From the NCBI RefSeq assembly GCF_002571385.2, contig NW_019217790.1, positions 1,842,776 to 1,903,500 on the forward strand: 60,725 nucleotides of DNA. The letters are read 5' to 3'. The notes under the pieces are model-generated. The model did not search any database and had not been told where the DNA came from. It saw only the letters and a program-made list of their open reading frames with translations. Positions 11,640 to 50,277 of this stretch are shown piece by piece (within the stretch, counting starts at the first letter, position 1; each line of letters starts with the position of its first letter). The DNA is from Stylophora pistillata (Eukaryota). The translations under genes were made by a program, and so were the position numbers.

Positions 11640-11979
11640 TCTTTACTAGTGTTAAGGGTCAATGCCCGTATGTAAGTAAAGGCGCTGACTACTAAAAGCT
11701 GCATCGTAGTATACTGAGTGAGTCATGGGTATTGATTGCAAAGTTATGAAGTAAACGATTGAAAATGATAAAGCCCGCTCTAAAATGAAAGAAGTTATTA
11801 CCAGGGCTAAGCTAGATCGAACATCCTCGGTTGCCCGTCAACTTAATTACTTGTGTGAGGCTTTTACACCGTCTTTAAGATTAAGAATAAGTCAGAAATC
11901 AGAGAAGTTCTGCTTGACACGATTGCCGAGAGTGGAAGTAAAATTCGACAAGCTAGTGGCGGACTATCCCTTTTACTTA

Positions 11980-12205
11980 TGATGCACGATCCTCGTAGTA
12001 GAGAGCGCTATTTATGCAATAGCAAAAATCAGACCTGAAAAAAAAATCAGGCCTGTACGGGATTTGAACCACTGACCTCTGCGATACTAGTGCAGCGCTC
12101 TACCGATTGAGCTAACAAGCCAACTGGGAGCAGGCCGTTAAGTTGATTCGTAATAAACCCGTGATGATAAATCAGATACGATGAATATATGAATTTCATA
12201 TATTC
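11980..12205 (-). mobile_element. tRNA-related SINE-like repeat, family B
   Basis: Minus strand ttagctcaatcggtagagcgctgcac...ggttcaaatcccgtacaggcctgattttttt. Related sequence at 13840-14105, 41800-41870 and 59890-59970. Confidence 0.75.
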
Positions 12206-31000: not shown

Positions 31001-33825
31001 CGAAGAGCTTCTTGGCTACACAGGGAGCGTTGAAACCAAGTGATGTGTATCCCTGCTTGCACGTCACCAAAATGACCTAAATAATGTTCTTGTCTTAGTT
31101 AAGCTCATGATCACTATCTCACCAACAACTGCCATGTGTGAAGGTCATTCTCAGCAATGAATCGGCTGAAAATAGTGCTGAAAACAAGAATGCAGCAGGG
31201 GACATTGAGCAACCTCCTGAGTTAAAGACCAAGGCACGGTGCGAAAAGACTTTGACCCAGATTGTGCAATTGATCAGTGGCTCTTAAAGGCGAAAACAAA
31301 GGGTCACATTTTGTCAAAACCCAATGTTAGTTCTTCTTCTGCCATCCATAGTGACACTAATGATGGAAGAGAAGCGGAGCAAGAACAGCAGGAGGATGAC
31401 AACATGTCGCTGCCCCCATTGCCACAACTTGTTGTTGATGAGGAAGAAATCAAGTGATGGCATTGTTGAATCGTCCTTAATCTCAACTGAACAGTCAGAC
31501 TTATTGCTGGTGAAAAACATTTAATGTACGAGTGAATTTTGATTTAAATAAAAGGAGTTACTATTTAAGCAAGCTATTTTGTGCCCCACAAGTTTGATGT
31601 GCATGACATCCAGTTTAGGTTTAGCAGAAAAAATTACTTACAAGGCTTAAAATGTCATTAAAAAGAAAAAAAAAAACCTGAATGTTTTTGAGTCAATGAA
31701 GTCATCGTATCTGCAGGGTTAAGGTGAGTTACTTGCAATAAAGTGAAAAGTGTTCGGTTTTTTATCTTTAATAACATTTTTACCCTTGGACATAGTTCAC
31801 AATTAATGTTGTTGCTATAAATTAAAATACACCACAAGCCACATGTTGAATTGATTTTATTTCTAAATACAATTTGAACCAATCTTTTTTTGACAAGCAC
31901 TTTTGGGCTCTTGGACAACCAAATTCTCTATGCTGGTTGTCTGATGGACAAGGGGATTTCAAAAATTTTCTCTTACTGTGCGGTGTAGGAATGCTGGCTG
32001 AGCTGAGATTCTTTGCTCCATCATCTGTACTCAAATATTCATAAATCGTTAATTTTACCTGCATTTAAATCTTTATAAATCCTTAATTTTACCTGCATTT
32101 AAATCTTTATAAATCCTCAATTTTACCTGCATTTAAATAGTGGACTTGTTGCTTGGGGTAATGCATCTAAGGACTTTCTTTAAAAAATTGTTATTCTCCA
32201 AAAGTGTGTATTATGTTTAGTCTACTTTGTTGATAGGAAAGAGCATGTAATGCCCCATTTGTAAAAGCACAAATTCTACTCTTCACCTTCTTTTATTAAG
32301 AAGCTGAATATGAATTAATGCTTGACTTTGATAACAACAGTGCACCTTAACAGCATCACAAAACTTTTCATGAGAGCTTTAAACTTCCATATATACCACT
32401 TGCTCATCAACGTCACGACTCTTCAGTGTTAAGTACTCTACGCTTGCTATGCAAAGAAAAGCTTTTTCCAGTGTTGGTTCAAACTCTAGAATGAGATACC
32501 TCATAAATTTAAAAATTTGCCAAAGAAATTCTTTTAAAGAAAGCAAAAGAGCTCTTAATATTCTAGAGACTGAAGATTCTTATATGGAGCTTGATGAGAT
32601 AATGCTAAAATTCAAACACAGCAAATTTAACCAGTGTCTACAGTATGTTGGGTACACTTAGAAACTCTGACCTTTTTCCTTTACAATGAACACGTCATTT
32701 TCCTTTTTCTTAATTCTTCTCTTGCATATCTTTTTGGCTTTTTTATATTTCTTCATTCTTGAACATTTCACAGACAATTTCTACATTGTTGGAATGCAAG
32801 AATAAATGTACGGACAACATCTGACAAAAATAAAATAGTCGCTGGCTGAGCTTTTTGATAGTCACTGGCTAGTGTTACACCAAGGCTCTGTTCCCTGTCT
32901 GTACATTCGTGGGTTGTCATATTTCCTCATTGTTTTGGAGCTATCTTTTTCATGACATCTCTCAAATGTATTCCTTGTTCAAGAGTGCCAGTGCCAGTTT
33001 GCTTGTGGAAAAAAATCTTACTGGCAAAACTTTGCAAATAGACTAAAAAGTTAACTTTGAGCCCTGTATAATGTACATTTGATTGTATTAACATTTTAAA
33101 ATTGCACATTACAATCATTTAACTATTATTATTATTACTATTAACATGTTTAGTTGATTGTACACAGCTTAGAAAAATATAACTTACAAGTTCTGAACTA
33201 AAACTTTGTTGAGAAATTGTATAACTCAAGCAAAATATTTTCTTATTATTGTACGTATTACATTTATTTATTCAATTGTCATTCATTCAAAGCTAGTTTG
33301 TTAATGTTTCTCACTGATAGCTCCATGTGTATTTGCAAGATAAATATGATCATAGACTGTATATGTATAAGCATGTATGTATGCATGTGACCTTTTGTCA
33401 ACAGTTGTATTCAAGCCTTGAGTAATAAGCTCTCTAAATCGTTATGGTAGTAGAGAAGGATCATTTTAAGTGTGAGTGGGCCCTCTAAAAGGTTATAAAT
33501 CACCATTTTGCTGGTTTAATAATCTTTTCTTTTTTGTCTCCAGTTAGATACAAGTGAATGTGCCAAAATAGCAGGCTGTTTCAAGAGCAAGGATTTTTCA
33601 CCATTTATGACAAGTGGTATTTTTGCAGAGGGAACGAAGTACCAATTCTTGCGTGTGGAAGACGAAAAGTTAGTTCTGGGAAAGAAAAAAGAGCAGGGAG
33701 CTATCTCCTTGCAGTGTTCCAAGACAGCAGTTGTCATTGGCCATTGTCCAGAAGGAGGGCAGCAGGGCAACCTAAACAAAGGTGTTGCAGTAATTGCAGA
33801 GTACCTTGAAAGCTTAGGCATGTAA
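28029..33825 (+). CDS. PFN: Profilin (140 aa, 2 coding exons)
   Basis: Exons 28029-28169 (MSWDSYLDNLIAQ...ACIIGVDGGAKW...AFK) and 33544-33825 (LDTSEC...GTKYQFLR...KTAVVIG...GQQGNLNKGVAVIAEYLESLGM*), joined by a GT-AG phase-0 intron. A possible 5' non-coding exon donor lies at 23861 (gtaagt). Confidence 0.95.
28838..31980 (+). mobile_element. hAT-superfamily DNA transposon with a pseudogenised ZNF862-like transposase (29258-31457)
   Basis: TTF-type Zn finger (FQEQWKSEFPWL...MYCFYC), DSSTD...EQE, DGASV, H[C>R]VAHNLEL, TWWLS and a C-terminal SPTTAMCE..FSAMN-like motif, with several frameshifts and stops. Left end cagggtgcgccaaa at 28838 has ggacaa/ttgtcc subterminal motifs; right TIR is degraded. 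Confidence 0.85.
31980..32620 (+). mobile_element. LINE RT 3' fragment, continuing from 28510-28837 and split by the hAT insertion
   Basis: The left part ends IKYLGFLIDENLSWKNH...KISKTV and the right part resumes VGMLAELRFFAPSSVL. Contains a ~34-bp internal tandem repeat at ~32050-32138. Confidence 0.75.
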
Positions 33826-34719
33826 TGCAACTTTAATTTCTAACTAGCACTGTGCAGTATGTGGTTAAAATCTGTTCTTTGATTCTCAACCACATTACCT
33901 AATTATTATTTTTGTTGTTGTTTTCATTGAGGCCTTGCTGTAGAGAAACTGGAGTTTTATGAAAAAATGAACTGTTTTGTAGTGTTGTGATGATGATGAT
34001 GATGATTGCAATTAAAAGGCCATCCTTTCAACAGGTTTCAAATTGACAAAATATTTCACTGTAATTGTCTTGAGAAACTAGCAAATAAACTAGCTTAGTT
34101 AATTTATGTGGTTGTTTTAAGAAGTGTACCTGATGTATTTTGGAAAGGGATACACAGCCTAAGTACTTGTCTCAGGAACTTGCTCTTCAATTCTAATAAA
34201 TCGAATTCTTTGTGCTTTTTATTGTGTGAAGCACTGGTATTGCGACTATTTAAATGCTAGCTAACAAAAAAAATGCAATATATGTTTCAAGAAACCCACT
34301 CAGACCTCCCCTCCCTGCTAATGCACACAAATCCCCTACCCATGGTGGGCTGGAGGGAAGCTGTACTCTACAAAATGTTTTCTGAATTTTCAACTTGAGC
34401 AACTAACCGCCCTTGAGAGGACGAGGGAGTTATTTTATGAAACGAAACAAGAGTGGAACCTCGAAAGATGAGGGCTAGATATGCTGTATTCCCTCGAATA
34501 AGCCCCCACTCCGTAGGCCACAATGTCAAACAAAGACCCCTCTCCTCCCTCAACTTCTTAAAGAGAAGGAACAGAGGAATACATATTTCTATTGCTACTT
34601 TAATTACAACTTTTCAAGCTTCATCGACAGTGGAATCAGCAAACAAGAGTAGGTTTTTTTTTCGTTGAAGTCACTTCCAGGTACGTAGTTGTTACTCTGT
34701 GCTTCCAGTGTTCGGTTAA

Positions 34720-36128
34720 GTGCGTCACTTGATCTTTAAGAACGTGTCTGTAAGAATCAAACATCTTGGGAAATGAAAATTTTCAACCCCCCTCCAAATT
34801 TTGCATGCAGTTAGGCACTCGGGGGGGGGGAGGATGCACAAAAATGCCCTTTTTAAAGGTTGCAGCACTCTTGCTGCCATGGTAACAACGGCTGCCTGTT
34901 TGAGGCCTGGGGCCTCATTTTCATACAAAAGCGTAAAAAAAGTGTAAAATGTTTATTTCTCTATCTCGAGCTAAATACAACATTGCAAATTGGTACTTCT
35001 AGCATACATAATGACATCATTTGAAGGGGGGTTGAAAATTTTCATTAGGTGCGTCACTTGATCTTTAAGAACGAGTCTAAGAATCAAACATCTTGGGAAA
35101 TGAAAATTTTCAACCCCCTTCAAATTTTGCATGCAGTTAGGCACTTAATGGCGATGCACAAAAATGCCCTTTTTAAAGGTTGCAGCACTCTTGTTGCCAA
35201 GGTAACAACGGCTGCTTGTTTGAGGCCTCGGGCCTCATTTTCATACAAAACCATCGTAAAAATAGTGTAAAATGGTTACCTCTCTATCTCGAGCTAATTA
35301 CAACATTACAGATTGGTACTTCTAGCATACATAATGACATCATTTATCTTGACTTTCATACATTAAATTTTCCCTGGGAGTGAATGTAAGCACATCAATA
35401 GGTTATTTATCTCGCTACAGTTTCGGTCATTTGCTGTAGGGTAAAACAGGGAAAACGTTTTTCTAAATTTCTCCAAAAGTACACCGATTCTGGAACTGAA
35501 ACTACGCACTTAGTTCGTCATAATATTCTAGTTTTTAAATATGTAACCATCTCTGCGGGCCGGCCTCCACTTTTCATAATGGCTTCGCGAATAAAGCTCA
35601 AAAATCAGACATTGCATAAATTGCAGTGTTTCCATCTAATGTTCTCAACAACAACCCTTTCAGACAAATGAAAAGTACAAGACTTTGAAAGAATGTTATC
35701 TTATGAGCAATATCCCGAAGAGAAATCTCGCCTCTAGCTTTAATATTTACAAAAATGTGATCAACCTTCATGGAGGACTACTCGACGTAACTACAAACAT
35801 GTACCTTAAATTGTGTGCATATCATCCAGATTCCGAGTACTGTACCTTCTTTCATGGGAATTTGAGCAATCTGAAATCCTCTGAAGATACACTGTTATAC
35901 CTGTCTGTCATTTGAAACATGTTAAAGCTGGCTGATCTACACGAAACTATCCGTAACACCGGTCATTTGACATAAAAAAGTACGTTGTCGATGGCGTGAC
36001 GCTGGATTTCTCCATGAAGTTTCAATCAGGTCGCTCCAAAGAAGACGAGATATGGACATTTTTCGACATTTCAGCAGTTTTCCTCGCATTCTGAAGAAAA
36101 AACAACAAAAAAAGGAGGGGAAAACTGT
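34720..36128 (+). repeat. Left arm of a long inverted repeat (35049-36128), preceded by a partial tandem duplicate (34720-35020)
   Basis: Reverse-complement colinear with 48486-49572 over ~1.05 kb, e.g. gatggcgtgacgctggatttctccatgaagttt vs aaacttcatggagaaatccagcgtcacgccatc. Confidence 0.9.
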
Positions 36129-36417
36129 TGTATCTTAGGAAATTCAAGGACGAAATTATAAACAAACCCGCAATGAACATGAACATTCCAAGATCTTTTT
36201 ATTCCTGTTCTTTTCTGCGCAGGCGCATCCATGTACACGTAACACAACCATGACGTAACTTAATATAATGTAACACAAGTATAACAAAACAAGATCACGA
36301 TATGACAAAAACCTTGATTGAAAGCTCATAAACAATGAGATTATAAATCGCAACTTATCAGCAGTAATACGGCCACGTTAAAAGGCAGACTGCAAACCGT
36401 GCAGACTCTGCAGACCG

Positions 36418-39400
36418 GGGTGTGGACAAAACGTGGCCTAGGCCATGGCCTACCCTGTGGCCTACCCTATGGCCTACCCTGTGGCCTACCCTGTGGCCTA
36501 CCCTGTGGCCTACCCTATGCGGATNNNNNNNNNNNNNNNNNNNNNNNNNNNNNNNNNNNNNNNNNNNNNNNNNNNNNNNNNNNNNNNNNNNNNNNNNNNN
36601 NNNNNNNNNNNNNNNNNNNNNNNNNNNNNNNNNNNNNNNNNNNNNNNNNNNNNNNNNNNNNNNNNNNNNNNNNNNNNNNNNNNNNNNNNNNNNNNNNNNN
36701 NNNAGGTTTTTAATATATTTGACCTCATTCTAGTAACAATCCTGTTATAAACGCTGAAACCATGACTATTCCAGTTACATTTAATGCGCAGACGATTACT
36801 AACCTAGACTCGTCTATATCTTTATTTTCAGATTTATGGCATTACTTCACGAATATTGTCCAAAATCCTGGACATATTTAGTGCTTGCCCTTTTATCGTC
36901 TGGTTCCCCGTCAGCCATTTTCTGTTTTTGGTATCATAGTAGCGATCCAGAACGTTCAAAGACCATGGTATGTTAACGTTGTGCAGCTCGGAAACAAAGA
37001 AACGGGCAAAGTTGATGGCTTCCGATTCCGTTATCGAACCATTTGCGTTATCTTGCGGCATCCACGCTCCGAGATATGTCAGCAAACCGTTTTCCCCCTT
37101 TTGATAATCAGTTGCGTGTTTAATTGCAGTTTTGACATTGTTTTGGCCTTCAGAACTGCCGTCACTGCTCCAGTACTTCTGGGAACCAAGCACTTTGTTT
37201 GGACCAGAGGCATAAAGATGCCACTCAGCCATCATATACTTATCATTTTCATAGATTTTTGAATCAATTTTAGATAAGTCCTCGGCAGTTTTTCCGGGAG
37301 ATCCCAAAATCAGAATACGCTGAGGGTTGTTCCCACCTGTACGTCGGATTTCGTGCGTCACGTTCATGGTCCATCGGTTATATTTCTCGGTATTCTGGCG
37401 AAGACTCTCGTCATTTTTGTTATTTCGTTTGCAAGTGTCTTTTCCTAGTTCTGTAAAAAGATTAAAACTCAGTCTATAGTCCTTGTCCTTTAACTGCCGT
37501 GCTACCGCTGTCCACCAATTCACGTAGGCTTTAAAGTCCTTTTCCATGGCGCAGGCCTCTGCTTGATGGTGAACCCAGGAGATGATTGGAATCACATCAT
37601 GTTTCAGACAATGGTCGACAACGGTCGTCAGGTCGCTAAGAAACCGTTTGAATTTGACGGTAGAGTAGTCATATGAATAGAGATCTGCCCTGCATCGAAG
37701 TCTTAAGTTGCTAAAGCCTTTTTCATGGACGTCTCTGATGTTCCGTTCCCAGTACTTTTTCATCGGCGTCTTCGTTTTGAACCAATTCGTAGAAAATCCT
37801 GCTCTGACAATCCCTGCTTGGTACTGTTCCGGGGTAATTGGATCATTTACGTTCACTACTGCAAAAAAAAAAATTGAATCGACCAAGAATATTTGAACGA
37901 ACATTGTCGAATGTCTGGTTTACAACAGAGTTCGTTCACCAAGCGAAAATAAACAACGATCCAAAATTTTGACATTTCAATTCTATATCATAAGAAGACC
38001 AATGATATTAGTCGAAATGACAATTGGAAAAACAGTTTCATCGAATCTCAAAAAGTACCCCAAAACAGACGAAAATATTCAATTTGGTCTAGAGATGTGG
38101 TCTCAAGCATCGGAGCGCTGAATCCGCAGGTCTAAGGTTTGATTCTTTGTGAGGATTTGATTTTTTTTTTGTCACACGCTCATGACACACACACAAAAAA
38201 ACAAAACATCTAGACAACGAGGAGTCCCTCCTTTTCGGCGAAGTCCTTAACGCGAGTAAAAACATTAGTGAAAAAAAAAATTGATGTTAGTTTGCCGCGG
38301 GAAGCTCTTAGAGTAAGCTCCTGCGGTGCATCGACTTTACTCCAAGGGATGCCTTCTAATTAAATCATGGCTACCAGTTTCTAGCAAAGAAAAGGTGGAG
38401 CTTCATCCCTTTACCAGTAGTTTTAAGCAATTTGTTAAAGGTCTTTCATTTCTAACGAATAACTGACAAAATTTGAAATTTATATCGCGACCTTAAACTG
38501 CAACTGTGCGCAATTTCATTGATCGTTTTCGTGAGCCAATGATTTTCTTTCAGATATTTACGTGATGGAATACAAAGTAAACTCTTCACATCACATTTTA
38601 ATTAAAAATTGTCTTTGGACCCACCTGTTTCCCCGGTTATGAAAACCATAAACGGCAGGAAAGCTGAACTTAACAGGACCAATGATCTGAACATTTCGTC
38701 TCCTTAAGTTGATTGTTTTCGATCTGTATAAAGGAATTTAAAAACTACATTTAGGGCTTTGTGTCCGAGAAAAAAACGTCGTTTACTGAGTTCCGGGATT
38801 CCTGAGTGAAGTAACAATTATTATAACATACGGCGCAGATTAATATTTCCTTAAAGTATACTTCAATAGAAGATTTTAATTTTAAAATCGTACAATTTCA
38901 GAAATTCCATCACAAACTTACGAAATTTTCTGGCCGTAAATTCTAGTGANNNNNNNNNNNNNNNNNNNNNNNNNNNNNNNNNNNNNNNNNNNNNNNNNNN
39001 NNNNNNNNNNNNNNNNNNNNNNNNNNNNNNNNNNNNNNNNNNNNNNNNNNNNNNNNNNNNNNNNNNNNNNNNNNNNNNNNNNNNNNNNNNNNNNNNNNNN
39101 NNNNNNNNNNNNNNNNNNNNNNNNNNNNNNNNNNNNNNNNNNNNNNNNNNNNNNNNNNNNNNNNNNNNNNNNNNNNNNNNNNNNNNNNNNNNNNNNNNNN
39201 NNNNNNNNNNNNNNNNNNNNNNNNNNNNNNNNNNNNNNNNNNNNNNNNNNNNNNNNNNNNNNNNNNNNNNNNNNNNNNNNNNNNNNNNNNNNNNNNNNNN
39301 NNNNNNNNNNNNNNNNNNNNNNNNNNNNNNNNNNNNNNNNNNNNNNNNNNNNNNNNNNNNNNNNNNNNNNNNNNNNNNNNNNNNNNNNNNNNNNNNNNNN

Positions 39401-39943
39401 NNNNNNNNNNNNNNNNNNNNNNNNNNNNNNNNNNNNNNNNNNNNNNNNNNNNNNNNNNNNNNNNNNNNNNNNNNNNNNNNNNNNNNNNNNNNNNNNNNNN
39501 NNNNNNNNNNNNNNNNNNNNNNNNNNNNNNNNNNNNNNNNNNNNNNNNNNNNNNNNNNNNNNNNNNNNNNNNNNNNNNNNNNNNNNNNNNNNNNNNNNNN
39601 NNNNNNNNNNNNNNNNNNNNNNNNNNNNNNNNNNNNNNNNNNNNNNNNNNNNNNNNNNNNNNNNNNNNNNNNNNNNNNNNNNNNNNNNNNNNNNNNNNNN
39701 NNNNNNNNNNNNNNNNNNNNNNNNNNNNNNNNNNNNNNNNNNNNNNNNNNNNNNNNNNNNNNNNNNNNNNNNNNNNNNNNNNNNNNNNNNNNNNNNNNNN
39801 NNNNNNNNNNNNNNNNNNNNNNNNNNNNNNNNNNNNNNNNNNNNNNNNNNNNNNNNNNNNNNNNNNNNNNNNNNNNNNNNNNNNTAGGCCATAGGGTAGG
39901 CCACAGGGTAGGCCATGGCCTAGGCCAGGTTTTGTCCACACCC
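36418..39943. mobile_element. Foldback/Mutator-like non-autonomous element with 12-bp tandem-repeat TIRs and a 9-bp TSD, carrying a GH5 gene
   Basis: Left gggtgtggacaaaacgtggcctaggccat(ggcctaccctgt)n; right (acagggtaggcc)n atggcctaggccaggttttgtccacaccc. Flanks tgcagaccg (36409-36417) and tgcagacag (39944-39952). Both arms run into N gaps. Confidence 0.8.
36834..38694 (-). CDS. Secreted glycoside hydrolase family 5 (cellulase)-fold protein, 364 aa, 2 exons; predicted nucleophile Glu is Ala
   Basis: Exon 1 38694-38625 (MFRSLVLLSSAFLPFMVFITGET, signal peptide, donor gtgggt); exon 2 37858-36834 (acceptor tttttgcag); phase 1 matches. GH5-like motifs: GFSNLRL, VVDHCLKHDVIPII, WWTAVARQLKD, FNLFTE, IRRTGGNNPQRILIL, EWHLY, YLGAW, NIPWSL. 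Confidence 0.85.
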
Positions 39944-42115
39944 TGCAGACAGTGGAGACGGGGGAATTTTTGGTTACTTACTACTTCACCCTTCGATACA
40001 GTACACCCGTGATTATATATATATTTTCTTATTTTTACAACAGGGAAGGTTTCGTGGCCAACAGATAAGTGCCGACTGCTTGTTTACTAGACTTGGCCGG
40101 TTTTTGGGTCCTCAACGAAGAGTCCGGACTCGCTCACACTCTAGTCCTGATCACGTGAAACTTTATTTGCTGAATCAAAGTGCTTATATACATATTGGTG
40201 GCTAGTTTTTACGTGATTAGATATGCGAGGGAAGGCATGTAGTTTCCTTTCAAGTAAACACCTCAATTCGAACGCGAGCATAATGTTTTGTTCGTCCCTA
40301 AGTAAATCCTGCTTTGTTAAGATTACACTTTGCACATTTTTGCATGTTACAAGGATCATATTTCTGCTTTACAATAACCTCGTAGACTATTGATCTATTC
40401 TTAAACTTAGGATGACAGGTCACGTTTCAATGCGCTAGTCACGCTTTCTTTAGTTTTACTACACTTATCATTAATTTTTGATGAAAAGTCTTAGAAAAGT
40501 CTTAGCTTCCACGAAATGTAGAAATCATTGTTTCATCTTTAAGGCAATGTCCTATCAGAAAAAAGGCGTGCAAATGTATGGGTACGATCTTATTTCCGAA
40601 TAAAAGTCGATTTTAGCTTGCAGCACTTTATTTACTGTAAAGTTCGTTGGGTCGTGTTGTGAAGATCCTGATAAATATTTGCTTCGTCCACGCAGCCCAT
40701 TTCTTACCACTAAATCAGTCACTGGTTTCCATACTCAATACAGAAATAAAGAGAGTTAACAAAAGTGTATGACAAAGCTAAAAAATTCATCTCAACACAA
40801 GGGAAAATTCAAATCAGTACAACCCTCCCGTCTCCCTCTCAGCCGTTTTTAGGGTCGTCACGCAACGCTCCTCCCCACTAACGGCTGCTCACGAGAGAGA
40901 CACATTCCTTTCCCTTAAATTGACCAATAAGAAACAGGCTTCCATATTCTGGAAATCTGGTCCAAGTCCCTCTCCATTACTTGAAAGCAAACTTTAAACT
41001 TTTTTGTAATTCGTGAGGGTGAACCGTGAGCCAAAGCTTTTAGAATTGGTTCCATATCGTCAGACAGGGTCTTGTTCATGGTCTTACTGGGATACTCAGC
41101 GACGACCTTCGTCTTGTTTCATTTTTTGGCTGATTTGTTTGTTTTATCTTTGGACTCAATGTGACAAATTGGGCGGCAAAAGCGCTTCGTACGAGTGAAA
41201 ACGTGCCATTGTCAAATAAACAACCTTGTGGTTTAGTGAGCCTTGGTAAGGTTGAACTCGAGGGAGTTAAGTTGGAAGAAGTCGTAGGAAATTCATTTAA
41301 ACTTACAAATGAAAGATGTTTTTTGACGGATGTCCCACCGACAGGTGTTAATTGATTTATATTTTCGGTGCGCAGTAATCGTTTCAAATGTTTGCCACTC
41401 TCTGAATAAGGAGACTTGAGCTCAGTCTTTATCTCTCTGACATGTTCTTCCGCGTTTTTGGTATTTCATCGAAGACTTGTAGCATTTAATTCACACTGCA
41501 ACGTCCGAATCAGAGTAAACATTTACATCGATGTCGAGTGCCTTGTTTATAAGTCTTTGAAGGTCAACAGAGCTTCTTCCCGTACTACAAAATTTAAAAA
41601 CACGAACACGTTGTTTAGAAGTGATTGTAGCTGAACAAATAAGCAATTTGTATCACTATTCAATATCTTTTATGGAGTAACATTCATCTTCCACTTGGGC
41701 AAGACCGCGCACGTGTGTATCTGTTTTTTGTTTCGCGCGCCCAGCAAACCTAAGAAGGAATTTTATTGGTGTAGCCGATGACAATAACGTGCATTCTACA
41801 TATGATGCACGATCCTCGCAGTAGATAGCGCTATTTAAGCAATAGCGAAAATCAGACCTGAAAAAAATCNTTGCCTTCGTCCTGAAAGATGGCGTCAGTC
41901 TCTTCGCTGTACCAATGTGCAGCATGTATGTTTTCGTCAGCCACCATGGCTGACATGTTGAACCATCAGTGCCACATTCCTACGTCCCAAGGTGAAAACG
42001 TTCGCTTCTTTCTCAAATGCATTTCGAGGGTACATACCGAATAATCAAACAAAGCAATACGAGTGGAGTTTCCCCGCGATATTTAACACGTGACATTAGT
42101 TTTTTTTTTTTCCAG

Positions 42116-46312: not shown

Positions 46313-47277
46313 GCCCTCGAAAAGCACGTTTTCTAAGTCAAAATCTTCTGTTAGCTCATGTACTACAATGAAGCTTTGGTCCGCCATATTGTCAAATTTT
46401 CCCGCCGTGGAACGCAGACGTGTTTCCGGCTCCAGTTGGAGCGGGACGAAACACCTGATGGATAAATGGTAAGCTCAATCTCATTCGGTTGGTCCATGAA
46501 TTCGGAAACTCCCTTACCTTTATGCCACGGTCACACCGATCGGATTTTTCTTACAAATGGTAAGCACCCTAAACCTTCCCTCGTCGATCTCCGTCTCACC
46601 ACGTGCTCGATAACTTTGAACCTTGGGATTTCGTCCAAATTGTTGCTAGGTAACCTAAGCTCGAAACAACCTCGTGAAACTACCGTTATGTGGTGTCCAA
46701 AAACTTGACGCTGTTCCAACGTTACTAAAAGAGTAAGGAAAAGGTGTAAACAAGAATTTAAAAAAAGTGAAAAAGCTGAAAAGATACAAAAAAAATTCCA
46801 GTCTGCACAGTCTGCACGGTCTGCAGTCTGCGTTTTAACATGACCAGCGGTCGTACTACATGTAAAACCCAGTTTCCACAATAGAAATTTGTACGATATA
46901 TTGCCTCTTCTTCGAGCGGATGTCATTTCTGAGTGACAGGAACTGAGATATTTCGAATCATCTAAAAACTGTTAGAAAATTGTCAGAAAATTTGCATAAG
47001 ATATATTAACGAGAGACTTATCACCACCGCAGTGCAATCGAGTCAGTCAATGTTTCCTTCCACGTCTTGATCTGGGAAAAATCCAAACAAAATTCGAAAT
47101 AAAAGATTAAATGAAATAATAATGTCATAATTCCACCTTCTAAGCTACTCATTATCCACACGCAAAGCGCAACTCGTAACTGGAATGAACTCCCCATGGT
47201 GATATGTAATCTGGATTACTTCAGGCTCTTCAGGAAAACGAACAGCGATTTTGTCACGATTTCTTTTCTAAGCTTAA

Positions 47278-47589
47278 AGAGGGGGGCATTGGGGCCTCTG
47301 GGAAACCGCAAAACCGGAAAAAAAAGCCTCCAAAACAGAAACACCGACGGAAAAAGGCAACAAAACCGAAAACCGCTACAGTTTCACCTTTAAAGGGGTC
47401 AAAAAAGAAAAACCGAAAACCGCATCAGAGTTTTCGTGAAAACCGAAAACCGAATGCAAAAACACGTAAAATTCGCCAACCGCTCTGAACATCAAAACTG
47501 GAAAATCGAACCTTTTAGGCCCAAAAACCAAAAAACCGATCCAAAAAACAGTCAAAGCCGCAAAACCGAAAATCTCAAAGCCCCCCTCC
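47278..47589. mobile_element. TTAA-flanked MITE with internal aaaaccg repeats (Kolobok/Sola3-like termini)
   Basis: ttaa|agaggggggcattg ... caaagcccccctcc|ttaa. Confidence 0.7.
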
Positions 47590-48125
47590 TTAAAGAAATA
47601 TGGATATAACGCAATCTTCCGGTGATTTACACGTCAGGAAGTCAAAGGTCTCTTTTATTGCCCCTTGAGGTGGCCGGCTCACCAGGTGAAAGAAGGGATC
47701 GTTTTTTCCGATGACGTTAGTCTGTGGAGATTATCAAGCTAACATCTGAGAATATTGTGCTCGTTGGTTCACCAGAGACACATCTGTACTCCTCAGTCCA
47801 TGCAACACCGAAAAAAGAACCTTTGTAATTTGTAGGCACTTACTGTAGCATTTTATCATCAAGAAAAAGAAATCTCAAGGCTCAAAGCCAAAGTATCGTT
47901 CAAGCATGCAAAAGATTCCCTGAAAAAAGCTAAATTTGTGGAAAATGGCTGCGATAAAATCCCTGTTCCACTTGTTGTAATGCGGGAATACCGAGTTGTT
48001 CAAAATCTCCACTTCGCGATAATTTTCGCGCGAGTGGTGGATTTTACATGTAGTTCTACCGCTGACAAGTTGTGATTTAATACTCTCACTCTCAGTGTTG
48101 ATGAGCATTCAATCAAGGTATTCCT

Positions 48126-48486
48126 GACAGAGCTGAATAATGAAAATCTACGTCAGAAGGTATGCGGTCAACAACGCGGGCTCAAGTGTACTTGGTCTTA
48201 AAATTTAGCGAAATTAGCGGAAAATAATAAGGGCTGACTTTTAAAACCGAGGAACTCCGTTTTCGTCGAAGGCACTTTCCTATTTCTAGATGTTTTAAGG
48301 AGAAAATAAATTTTTGAAAATTTTTAGGGAGTGTACCAAGTTTTTGGAGGTTGTTCTGTAAAAGAAAAGCAGCAAGGAAAACGATGCCTCGAAGCAACAG
48401 AATAGGAAATCAACCATGCGAACGACTCAAAGTCCGTGTTTGCGCGGCAAAACCTAGCGCATGCGCATACATTATTCAGCTCTGTC
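48126..48486. mobile_element. MITE-like element with a perfect 16-bp TIR
   Basis: gacagagctgaataat (48126-48141) / attattcagctctgtc (48471-48486); no clear TSD. Confidence 0.6.
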
Positions 48487-49572
48487 GGTTTTCCTCTCTC
48501 TTTTTTGGTTGTTTTTACTTTAGAAGGCGAGGAAATCTGTTGAAATGTCGAAAAATGTCCATATCTCGTCTTCTTTGGAACGACCTGATGGAAACTTCAT
48601 GGAGAAATCCAGCGTCACGCCATCGTAATAACGTACATGTTTATGACAAATGACCGGTGTTACGGATAGTTTCGTGTAAATCAGCCAGCTTGATTTAACA
48701 GGTTTCAAATGACAGACAGGTATAACAGTGTATCGTCAGAGGATTTCAGATTGCTCAAATTCCCGTGAAAGAAGGTACAGTACTCGGAATCTGGATGATA
48801 TGCACACGATTTAAGGTACATGTTTGTAGTTACGTCGGGTAGTCCTCCATGAAGGTTGATAATTTTTTTTTTTAAATATTAAAGCTATAGGTGAGATTTC
48901 TCTTCGCTATATTGTTTAGAAGATAATAGAAGATAACATTCTTTCAAAGTCTTGTACTTTTCATTGGTCTGAAAGGTTTTGTTGTTGAGAACATTAGTTG
49001 TAAACACTGCCAATTTATGCAATATCTGATTTTTGAGCTTCGTTCGCGAATTGCCGCTATGAAAAGTAGAGGCCGGCCCGCAGAGATGTTTACATATTTA
49101 AAAACTAGAATATTATAACCAACTAAGTGCGTAGTTTCAGTCCAGAATCGGTGTACTTTTGGAGAAATTTAGACAAACGTTTTCCCTGTTTTACCCTACA
49201 GCAAAATCGACCGAAACTGTACCAAGATAAATAATCTATTCGTGTGCTTGCATTCATTCCCAGTGAAAATTGAAGGCATCAAAGTAAAGACAAAGTGTCA
49301 CTATGTATGCTAGAAGTACCAATCTGTAATGTTATATTTAGCTTGAGATAGAGCAATAAACATTTTACACTTTTTTTGCGATGTTTTTGTACGAAAATGA
49401 GGCCCCAGGCCTCGAACAAGCAGTCGTTGTTACCATGGCAACTAGAGTGCTGCAGCTTTTACAAAGGGCATTTTTGTGCATCCCCCTGAGTGCCTAACTG
49501 CATGCAAAATTTGAAGGGGGGTTGAAAATTATCATTTCCCAAGATGTTTGATTCTGACAGACTCATTCTTAA
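48486..49572 (-). repeat. Right arm of the long inverted repeat, pairing with 35049-36128
   Basis: Reverse-complement colinearity along its full length, with scattered mismatches and indels. Confidence 0.9.
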
Positions 49573-50277
49573 AAGCGCTTATTCAAGGAAATGCAGTGAC
49601 TAGTTTAGTTGTCGAAGACTGCAAGCAGAAGTCCCCACCGTCCCGTTTGTTCCTCTATTTAGAGGAACTACAGTGCTAATGCCGTACTTTTGAAGCACAC
49701 GTGAGTCGCACGAGGGGGACTAAACCGGTCGTAAGGCGTTAGCCTCGGTCTAGCAGAATCCAGCACTAACGTGTTAACTTTGCAGGTATATTTCAGTATT
49801 ACAAACCCAGCAGTTAAGCGCTCAAAAAACACCCTACGTTAGTAAATGCACCTCGCGGATAAGTACAGGCGAACTCATTTTCGTGATAACCGACGGAGCT
49901 TTAGTCAAACCTTTTAACCGTAATAGTGACTAACATTTAAATTCTCATTACTGTCTGTACTTCTGCGAAATTACTCACTGGGTCACGAGAATAATGGAAA
50001 CGAACGCCAACCTAAGAAGCTTTGATTGTCAAACGAATTCTACCGGTCATTTCCGAAGGAATTTAATAGGAAAGAGTAGGGAGAATATCAACACTTATGT
50101 TAGGGTGCAAAGGGTTATATCACTCAGTGACGCTATAGCTAGTACTGAGTCCCTTCATCCTGGAAATGAAAATTAAGTCAATGATTGCAGTGGAAAGGTG
50201 AAAAATTTGCCAGATATGACAAATTTATGCCTCTGTCTCAAATGCAAGCCGGTGACTCTGAACCAACGGTCAGATCG

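What the first reader, a model, noticed from the sequence alone, without database searches (positions are those of the whole stretch)
36409..39952. Foldback/Pack-MULE-like element carrying an intact, spliced, secreted GH5-fold gene as cargo
Seen: inverted termini gggtgtggacaaaac... / ...gttttgtccacaccc, each followed inward by a 12-bp tandem array (ggcctaccctgt). They are flanked by a 9-bp near-perfect duplication (tgcagaccg / tgcagacag) that interrupts another repeat, whose uninterrupted inverted counterpart is visible at 46790-46846. The only recognisable content between the arms is a complete 2-exon gene with no stops or frameshifts, and no transposase. Known: 9-bp TSDs with G-starting long or tandem-repeat TIRs characterise Mutator/Foldback elements, and Pack-MULE gene capture is well described in plants, mostly as gene fragments. 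Inference: an animal DNA transposon is mobilising a whole functional gene, possibly amplifying it across the genome. Caveat: N gaps (36525-36703, 38950-39884) separate both arms from the cargo.
Basis: partly seen in the sequence, partly recalled or inferred. Interest (0 to 1): 0.88.

Follow-up and report, generated by a model that had tools for sequence, protein, structure and literature searches.

The report
Transposon ends around a scaffolded coral gene
The two ends of a common small coral transposon are real. So is the expressed GH5-like gene drawn between them, but two unread gaps separate the gene from both ends, so gene capture is unproven, and spread of the gene by this element is not seen.

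Summary
The observation largely holds. Two inverted ends (36418-36524 and 39885-39943; 59 nt, 98% complementary) interrupt another repeat at one point. They belong to a real family in this coral genome (Stylophora pistillata by contig match): about 187 tip matches against 23 in the control, at least 40 full-length copies of 0.73-1.03 kb with one conserved 0.7-kb interior, and 9-bp target duplications. The gene between them (36834-38694, minus strand) is NCBI LOC111331712, 364 aa, GH5-like. It is intact, and its intron is spliced out in poly-A RNA.

- No read or contig joins either arm to the 2,246-bp gene contig.
- RNA contigs, and an independent 3.7-kb contig, run past both contig ends for 296-392 nt and 365-1,044 nt without meeting an arm. 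Both gaps are therefore undersized.
- No other family copy carries foreign DNA.
- None of about 12 paralogue loci lies near these arms.
- The ancestral home of the gene family is the cluster on scaffold C59, which is syntenic with Pocillopora.
- In favour of real linkage, a second, 96-97% identical contig pair on scaffold C404 repeats the order left flank, arm, gene.

My odds are about 50% scaffolding artefact and 40% real inclusion. Amplification is refuted.

The parts
36371..36417 (+). Left piece of the host repeat's 5' end, a run of TGCAGACNN 9-mers, into which the element is inserted
   Evidence: Seven other copies read through this point without interruption. Inverted 48-nt counterpart at 46798-46845.
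36409..36417 (.). Left 9-mer (TGCAGACCG), a possible target-site duplication
   Evidence: Matches 39944-39952 at 8 of 9 bases. It is confounded by the host's own 9-bp periodicity.
36418..36524 (+). Left arm: about 35-nt tip, then at least six 12-bp units. The contig ends inside the array.
   Evidence: The exact family boundary is seen as loose ends of many unrelated contigs at 36418.
36525..36703 (.). Assembly gap (179 N). The true length is larger.
   Evidence: An RNA contig runs 296 nt beyond 36704, and the independent contig L089 runs 392 nt beyond it, without reaching an array.
36704..38949 (.). 2,246-bp contig holding the gene. It has no similarity to the family's interior.
   Evidence: It is 93% identical to C59:524814-527036 and 97% identical to C404:133995-135626.
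36834..37858 (-). Exon 2, including the stop codon, of the GH5-like gene LOC111331712
   Evidence: Homologues carry PF00150. PDB 4im4 endoglucanase E matches at E=7e-9.
37859..38624 (-). Intron, GT..AG on the minus strand. It contains a MITE-like repeat at 38211-38314.
   Evidence: An RNA contig joins 37858 to 38625, with ends CT..AC on the plus strand. Repeat hits.
38625..38694 (-). Coding part of exon 1 (23 codons plus 1 base): hydrophobic signal-peptide-like N-terminus
38950..39884 (.). Assembly gap (935 N). The true length is probably larger.
   Evidence: An RNA contig runs 365 nt beyond 38949, and L089 runs 1,044 nt beyond it, without a tip or array.
39885..39943 (-). Right arm: two to three 12-bp units, then the tip
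   Evidence: The family boundary is seen as loose ends at 39943.
39944..40829 (+). Continuation of the host repeat. Its first 9 nt are the right 9-mer TGCAGACAG.
   Evidence: Dozens of copies at 82-88% identity begin at this point or run through it.

Best explanation
Two ordinary things are drawn together by a scaffold.

(1) One copy of a roughly 0.9-kb non-autonomous cut-and-paste transposon is inserted 47 nt inside the 5' end of another repeat. This family has 9-bp target duplications and inverted ends made of a 35-nt tip plus a variable 12-bp minisatellite. It is Mutator/Rehavkus-like by its ends only. At this copy the minisatellites could not be read through. The canonical 0.7-kb interior, being shorter than ALLPATHS-LG's contig cut-off as I recall it (about 1 kb, not checked here), would have been dropped (inferred).

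(2) A 2.2-kb contig carries a recent duplicate (93% DNA identity) of a gene from the GH5-like tandem cluster on scaffold C59. That cluster is the ancestral home of the family, shared with Pocillopora.

The contig was placed in the gap between the two arms by read-pair or transcript scaffolding. That it really lies there is not shown. The gene is an expressed, spliced, probably secreted GH5-like protein that does not depend on the transposon.

Shown: the family, its ends and duplications, the host-repeat interruption, the gene model and splice, the paralogy and the synteny.
Inferred: that the placement is an artefact.
For: - At least 40 full-length copies share one interior at 87-93% identity and none has foreign DNA. 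The gene contig shares nothing with that interior.
- No contig of three DNA runs or one RNA run bridges an arm to the gene contig.
- RNA contigs extend 296 nt and 365 nt into the gaps. An independent metagenome contig (L089, 3,684 bp, no N, 99-100% identical to the window over the gene core) extends 392 nt and 1,044 nt beyond the contig ends with no tip, array or family interior. Both figures exceed the 179 N and 935 N estimates.
- Those flanks resemble the GH5 cluster regions of C59 and C1265.
- The assembly pipeline adds transcript scaffolding and three SSPACE/GapFiller rounds.
- On scaffold C404, two small contigs 96-97% identical to this locus sit between large gaps in otherwise unrelated sequence. 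Small repeat-rich contigs do get placed oddly in this assembly.
Against: - The same order and orientation (left flank plus left arm, then gene contig) appears twice, in C7 and in the 96-97% identical contig pair on C404. That is hard to obtain from random false links.
- No other gap within 14 kb on the left, or within the remaining 20 kb of the window on the right, could hold the contig.
- No other place in the assembly holds the flanks of the window-type copy at allelic identity.
- L089's 3' flank is a mosaic that looks like the C59 copy. Its silence about arms on that side is therefore weaker evidence than its length suggests.
Confidence: 0.5

Rival explanations
1. Real cargo. A copy of this transposon family lost its interior and acquired a segment of at least 2.9-3.7 kb from the GH5 cluster: promoter, signal-peptide exon, intron, catalytic-domain exon and 3' UTR. 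The likely route is template switching during gap repair after excision, as proposed for Pack-MULEs. A transposase supplied in trans then moved it into the host repeat on C7, where the gene is expressed.
For: - Scaffold order in C7, repeated in the C404 contig pair.
- Arms 98% alike, in inverted orientation, at a single point of a host repeat.
- A parent-like paralogue, now a pseudogene with two stops, lies in the ancestral cluster at 93% identity including the intron and flanks. This indicates a DNA-level copy.
- The C7 position is not syntenic with Pocillopora.
- The scaffolded span between the flanks (3.36 kb) is within about 0.4 kb of the minimum implied by L089.
Against: - No sequence joins an arm to the cargo.
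- Both gap estimates are too small.
- This would be unique among at least 40 copies.
- The target duplication cannot be read at this site.
- No autonomous partner was found: 18 PF10551 hits, none within 10 kb of a listed tip.
- The C404 twin shares 2.65 kb of flank outside the arm. If it is a second locus, it arose by segmental duplication, not by transposition.
Confidence: 0.28
2. Real adjacency without mobilisation. The gene-bearing segment entered a resident element copy in place, through ectopic repair or a nested segmental duplication, and has never moved as a unit. The C404 pair is then either the other haplotype or a later segmental duplicate of the whole region.
For: - The linkage evidence is the same as for the cargo reading.
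- Only one locus, plus its 96-97% identical twin, has this structure.
- The twin shares 2.65 kb of flank outside the arm.
- More than two sequence variants of the gene occur in single runs, which suggests extra near-identical copies.
Against: The same absence of bridging sequence. There is no independent sign of a repair junction, because both junctions lie in gaps.
Confidence: 0.14
3. Two independent insertions of the family on either side of a gene that was already resident at this locus.
For: Only that each arm is separated from the gene by a gap that could hide a partner arm.
Against: - The two flanks are adjacent parts of one host repeat that is continuous in seven other copies.
- The closest annotated Pocillopora meandrina homologue lies next to a Neur_chan gene, as on C59, not in this neighbourhood.
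Confidence: 0.03

Closest known systems
Pack-MULEs of rice, maize and Arabidopsis (Jiang et al. 2004, as cited in PMC6446971)
   Same: A non-autonomous element with inverted ends and 9-bp target duplications, no transposase and, as scaffolded, host gene DNA as its only interior. A parent-like copy exists elsewhere in the genome.
   Different: - Pack-MULEs usually carry gene fragments, are numerous, and are contiguous from end to cargo.
- Here the cargo would be a whole expressed gene of at least 2.9 kb, in an animal and in one copy only.
- The junctions are unread.
- The superfamily of the ends is not established by a transposase.
Rehavkus / MuDR-group elements (Table 1 of PMC6446971: 9-bp duplication, inverted ends of 26-400 bp, minisatellite)
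   Same: 9-bp target duplication, and inverted ends of 60-200 nt that contain a minisatellite.
   Different: - In Rehavkus the minisatellite is described before the 3' end only. Here it is in both ends.
- Rehavkus is reported there from arthropods and annelids, not cnidarians.
- No PHD-finger transposase with these ends was found.
Drosophila Foldback (FB) elements and FB-flanked composite transposons (from my own knowledge)
   Same: Inverted ends built partly of short tandem repeats, 9-bp duplications, and in Drosophila the ability of FB ends to carry foreign DNA between them.
   Different: Classical FB arms make up most of the element, with little or no middle. This family has short arms and a conserved 0.7-kb unique middle.
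Cnidarian/bivalve 'cellulase/esterase CelE-like' GH5-domain proteins (for example S. pistillata LOC111331712, Nematostella LOC5504203)
   Same: The window gene is LOC111331712 itself. Relatives at 47-80% identity occur across corals, anemones, an octocoral and Mytilus.
   Different: Nothing differs apart from its scaffold position away from the ancestral cluster.

Membership tests
Mutator-like elements (MULE / MuDR superfamily) | Target-site duplication of 9 (8-11) bp | tested here: met
   7 of 11 end pairs match at 7 or more of 9 flanking bases, against 0.6% of displaced controls. One pair fits 10 bp. At the window copy itself the test is confounded.
Mutator-like elements (MULE / MuDR superfamily) | Autonomous partner with a MURA-type DDE transposase and the same ends | tested here: inconclusive
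   18 PF10551 matches in the genome, including open frames of 645 and 810 aa. None lies within 10 kb of any of the 100 listed exact tips.
Classical Foldback (FB) elements | Long arms made mostly of tandem repeats, forming most of the element, with little or no unique middle | tested here: not met
   Arms are 60-200 nt. A conserved, non-palindromic 0.6-0.7 kb middle is present in at least 40 copies.
Pack-MULE-type transduplicate | Uninterrupted sequence from each inverted end into the captured host DNA | tested here: inconclusive
   Both junctions lie in N gaps. No contig of four runs bridges them. The independent contig L089 reaches no arm.
Pack-MULE-type transduplicate | A parental gene copy elsewhere in the genome | tested here: met
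   C59:524464-527354 is 93-94% identical over about 2.9 kb, including intron and flanks, and lies in the cluster syntenic with Pocillopora.
Pack-MULE-type transduplicate | Evidence of movement: further cargo-bearing copies with different flanks | tested here: not met
   No arm lies within about 1.5 kb or more of the GH5 loci on C59, C11, C1265, C1 and C4. The only twin (C404) shares the outside flank.
Rehavkus | 9-bp duplication, minisatellite next to the terminus, PHD-finger transposase | tested here: inconclusive
   The first two features are present. The transposase was not identified. Definition taken from PMC6446971.
Glycoside hydrolase family 5 (PF00150) | Significant match to the family profile or to solved GH5 structures | tested here: met
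   The window protein gives no Pfam hit at E<=0.01. Most homologues at 47-74% identity carry PF00150. The best PDB matches are GH5 endoglucanases, 4im4 at E=7e-9.
Glycoside hydrolase family 5 (PF00150) | Two catalytic glutamates (acid/base after strand 4, nucleophile after strand 7) | tested here: inconclusive
   In the HMMER alignment to 4im4 the acid/base Glu aligns (TE in place of NE). The nucleophile position aligns to Ala (GAW against GEF), in a low-confidence stretch. No structure model was made.

The most novel reading that the evidence does not exclude
A cnidarian non-autonomous Mutator/Rehavkus-like transposon has taken up a complete GH5-like gene with its own promoter and intron (at least 2.9 kb), and the gene is expressed from inside the element. 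This would be a whole-gene 'Pack'-type transduplication in a coral, caught at the single-copy stage.
Probability: 0.4. Interest if true: 0.65.

Novelty: new member of a known kind. Interest (0 to 1): 0.35.

Why it matters
If the gene really lies between the arms, this would be a rare animal example of a DNA transposon holding a whole working gene. It would give a direct handle on how gene duplicates leave a tandem cluster in corals. As it stands, the practical value is different:
- It defines a roughly 100-copy transposon family with 9-bp duplications and minisatellite-bearing ends in Stylophora.
- It shows that the apparent cargo rests on two undersized scaffold gaps.
- It flags scaffold C404 as holding stray near-identical contigs of this locus.
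- It shows that the GH5-like family's ancestral cluster is on C59.

Tried and rejected
1. Bridging the gaps with public data. Contigs of three DNA runs and one RNA run were laid on 36200-40200, and none bridges an arm to the gene. The 'opposite strands' and 'goes back' joints lie inside the 12-bp arrays and come from the repeat itself. The 38206-to-40014 joint has only 22 letters on one side, in low-complexity sequence, and was disregarded.
2. Looking for longer independent contigs through exact ORF look-ups on L089 and on both window flanks. These returned only L089 itself or nothing.
C404:124000-130565 and the flanks of the MULE transposase hits were therefore not inspected.
4. Using the 9-bp flank match as proof of transposition at this site. 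This was rejected because the host repeat has the same 9-bp period.
5. Treating L089's 3' flank as the content of the left gap. This was downgraded because that part of L089 follows the C59 pattern of indels.
6. Treating transcript contig L088 as a clean allele. Its 5' part is 99% C1265-type and its exon 2 is 99.7% C404-type, so it may be a chimeric assembly.
7. Earlier-findings searches by words and by sequence gave nothing on the transposon family.
8. The joined two-exon protein was not sent to any search.
9. No letters were proposed for either gap.
Full report
**What is in the sequence**

At 36418 a tip beginning GGGTGTGGACAAAAC is followed by at least six copies of a 12-bp unit (GGCCTACCCTRT). 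The contig ends inside this array at 36524. At 39885-39943 the reverse complement of the same array and tip is found. The arms are 59 nt long and 98% complementary. Between them lie 179 N, a contig of 2,246 bp (36704-38949) and 935 N. The window has only five other gaps, none close to this one.

**The arms belong to a real transposon family**

The 15-nt tip occurs 187 times in the 397.6-Mb assembly at one mismatch or fewer, against 23 for the reversed control. Most hits form plus/minus pairs 0.7-1.0 kb apart. Ten complete copies without N measure 731-1,028 bp.

Each end consists of three parts:
- a tip of about 35 nt;
- 0 to 13 of the 12-bp units;
- a further inverted stretch of about 20 nt.

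Between the ends lies a unique, non-palindromic interior. At least 40 scored copies, of 131 candidates, carry this interior over its full 721 nt at 87-93% identity.

Seven of eleven end pairs are flanked by 9-mers matching at 7 or more of 9 positions. The control rate is 0.6%. The family is therefore a non-autonomous cut-and-paste element with 9-bp target duplications and minisatellite-bearing ends. These features fit the Mutator group, and especially the description of Rehavkus in PMC6446971. It does not have the architecture of a classical Foldback.

No transposase with these ends was found. The genome has 18 matches to the MULE transposase domain, none within 10 kb of a listed tip. The superfamily assignment therefore rests on the ends alone.

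**The insertion site**

The left flank (from 36371) and the right flank (39944-40829) are adjacent parts of the 5' end of one high-copy repeat. Seven other copies read straight through the point. Everything between 36418 and 39943 therefore sits at a single point of a host repeat. This excludes the scenario of two independent insertions around a resident gene.

That part of the host repeat is itself a tandem run of 9-mers of the form TGCAGACNN. The window has as many units as one uninterrupted copy (L068). The near-duplicate 9-mers at the two ends are therefore not by themselves evidence of a target duplication.

**The gene**

The exon coordinates on the minus strand are:
- exon 1, coding part: 38694-38625;
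- intron: 38624-37859;
- exon 2: 37858-36834.

Together they give 364 aa, identical to NCBI XP_022792620.1 (LOC111331712; UniProt name 'Endoglucanase D') of Stylophora pistillata. The organism also follows from the 1,000,252-bp contig that C59 shares with an annotated S. pistillata protein.

A poly-A RNA contig joins 37858 to 38625 with GT..AG ends on the minus strand, so the intron is really removed.

The protein gives no Pfam hit at E<=0.01. Its relatives at 47-80% identity occur in corals, anemones, an octocoral and Mytilus, and most of them carry PF00150. The best solved relatives are GH5 endoglucanases. It is thus a member of an old metazoan gene family, with an N-terminal hydrophobic exon that looks like a signal peptide.

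**Paralogues and ancestral home of the gene**

The genome holds about a dozen related loci, most of them on C59 and C1265. The nearest is C59:524464-527354. It is 93-94% identical over about 2.9 kb, including intron and flanks, and it has two stop codons.

In Pocillopora meandrina the closest annotated homologue lies beside a ligand-gated ion-channel gene. The same neighbour lies beside the GH5 genes at C59:534-544 kb. Nothing else in the Pocillopora locus matches this window. C59 is therefore the ancestral cluster, and the window copy is a recent DNA-level duplicate of one of its members.

None of the paralogue loci that I hold has a tip, an array or family interior nearby.

**Are the letters across the gaps continuous?**

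This could not be shown, and the gap sizes are wrong.
- Contigs of three DNA runs and one RNA run were laid on 36200-40200, and none links an arm with the gene contig.
- One RNA contig continues 296 nt beyond 36704, and another continues 365 nt beyond 38949.
- An independent metagenome contig (L089, 3,684 bp, no N) is 99-100% identical to the window across the gene core. It continues 392 nt beyond 36704 and 1,044 nt beyond 38949. It has no tip, array or family interior, and it ends in the inverted terminus of a different high-copy element.

Both extensions of L089 exceed the gap estimates of 179 N and 935 N.

One caveat applies. The 3' flank of L089 follows the indel pattern of the C59 copy, so L089 may be a mosaic on that side. 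I have not written out or proposed any letters for the gaps.

**Evidence for a real linkage**

Scaffold C404 holds two small contigs bounded by gaps:
- C404:131334-133983 is 96% identical to window 33667-36524, including the same insertion point and left arm.
- It is followed, after 11 N, by C404:133995-135626, which is 97% identical to 37240-38878, in the same order and orientation.

The rest of C404 that I could read is unrelated to the window. This pair is therefore either the other haplotype, misplaced, or a segmental duplicate. In either case the adjacency of left arm and gene is seen twice.

Against this, the two gap estimates disagree with each other by about 700 bp. The assembly pipeline includes transcript-based scaffolding, which a single transcript could mislead for both versions. 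If the C404 pair is allelic, its placement there is itself a scaffolding error. Single runs also show more than two variants of the gene, which hints at collapsed near-identical copies.

**Weighing**

The priors favour an artefact. This would be the only one of at least 40 copies with foreign DNA, and whole-gene capture by DNA transposons is rare in animals. Short-read scaffolds do misplace small contigs between repeat-bounded gaps. The repeated adjacency on C404 favours reality. My estimates are:
- about 50% on a scaffolding artefact;
- about 40% on real inclusion: 28% captured and moved, 14% entered in place;
- 3% on two independent insertions.

The claim that the element is amplifying the gene across the genome is refuted for this assembly.

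**Comparison with known systems, and novelty**

If real, the structure would work like a Pack-MULE: a non-autonomous element whose interior is host DNA, with a parental copy elsewhere. Several features would differ:
- a whole expressed gene rather than fragments;
- an animal host;
- a single copy;
- ends not yet tied to a transposase.

The transposon family itself is a new member of a known kind. The gene is already annotated. Another (s1-788431) covers the nested inverted repeats around it, which I traced in part to the host-repeat copies at 35064-36418 and 46798-49573.

Noticed in passing
G000 C404:131334-135626 (loci L033, L062, L084): Two small contigs 96-97% identical to window 33667-36524 and 37240-38878 sit between large N gaps in an otherwise unrelated 297-kb scaffold. 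They are either misplaced haplotigs or a segmental duplicate of about 5 kb.
   Followed up: partly
window 36126-36307: A 182-bp stretch in the left flank is absent from the C404 version and from other copies of the flanking repeat. It is an insertion or deletion difference next to the element.
   Followed up: no
L089:3595-3684 (independent contig, 3' of the gene): This is the terminus of another high-copy element. Its 33-55-nt pieces recur at 96-100% identity, often as inverted pairs 1-4 kb apart. It shares the 9-mer TGGACAAAA with the tip of the family studied here.
   Followed up: no
window 38211-38314 and 38840-38947: Two short MITE-like repeats lie in the intron and upstream of the gene. 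Each has dozens of copies at 75-86% identity, some as close inverted pairs. The second ends the contig and may explain the assembly break.
   Followed up: no
window 36837-37856 (minus), protein residues near GAWMP: In the alignment to endoglucanase 4im4 the acid/base glutamate is kept (TE for NE), but the nucleophile position aligns to alanine. The same YLGAWMP motif is present in the Pocillopora and other Stylophora relatives shown (P0001, P0002, P0009, P0069). The protein may be a non-hydrolytic GH5-like protein.
   Followed up: partly
L092 (Pocillopora meandrina CALNXJ010000039.1:591826-617037) against L087 (C59:535000-544999): Conserved neighbourhood: a Neur_chan ligand-gated channel gene lies directly beside the GH5-like genes in both genera. 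The Pocillopora gene model P0009 fuses the two.
   Followed up: partly
L088 (Logan transcript contig, 1,806 nt): Its 5' UTR and exon 1 are 99% C1265-type, while its exon 2 is 99.7% C404-type. This is either a chimeric transcript assembly or a recombinant gene copy in another colony.
   Followed up: partly
window 37863 and 37187-37373 in runs X1 and X6: Three length variants of the poly-T tract occur in one run, and two sequence variants at about 1:2 depth occur in two different samples. This is more than a simple heterozygote would give and hints at collapsed near-identical gene copies.
   Followed up: no
G000 C404:136443-137600 and window 11974-12204: A tandem array (period about 248 bp) of a tRNA-like SINE unit lies on C404. 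A single 95% identical copy is in the window.
   Followed up: no
G000 C16:571844-574160 (loci L017, L018): A 2.3-kb composite of the same family: an outer pair of tips with an 8/9 flank match encloses a gap and a second full copy. The left flank of the inner copy is identical to that of the copy on C30.
   Followed up: no
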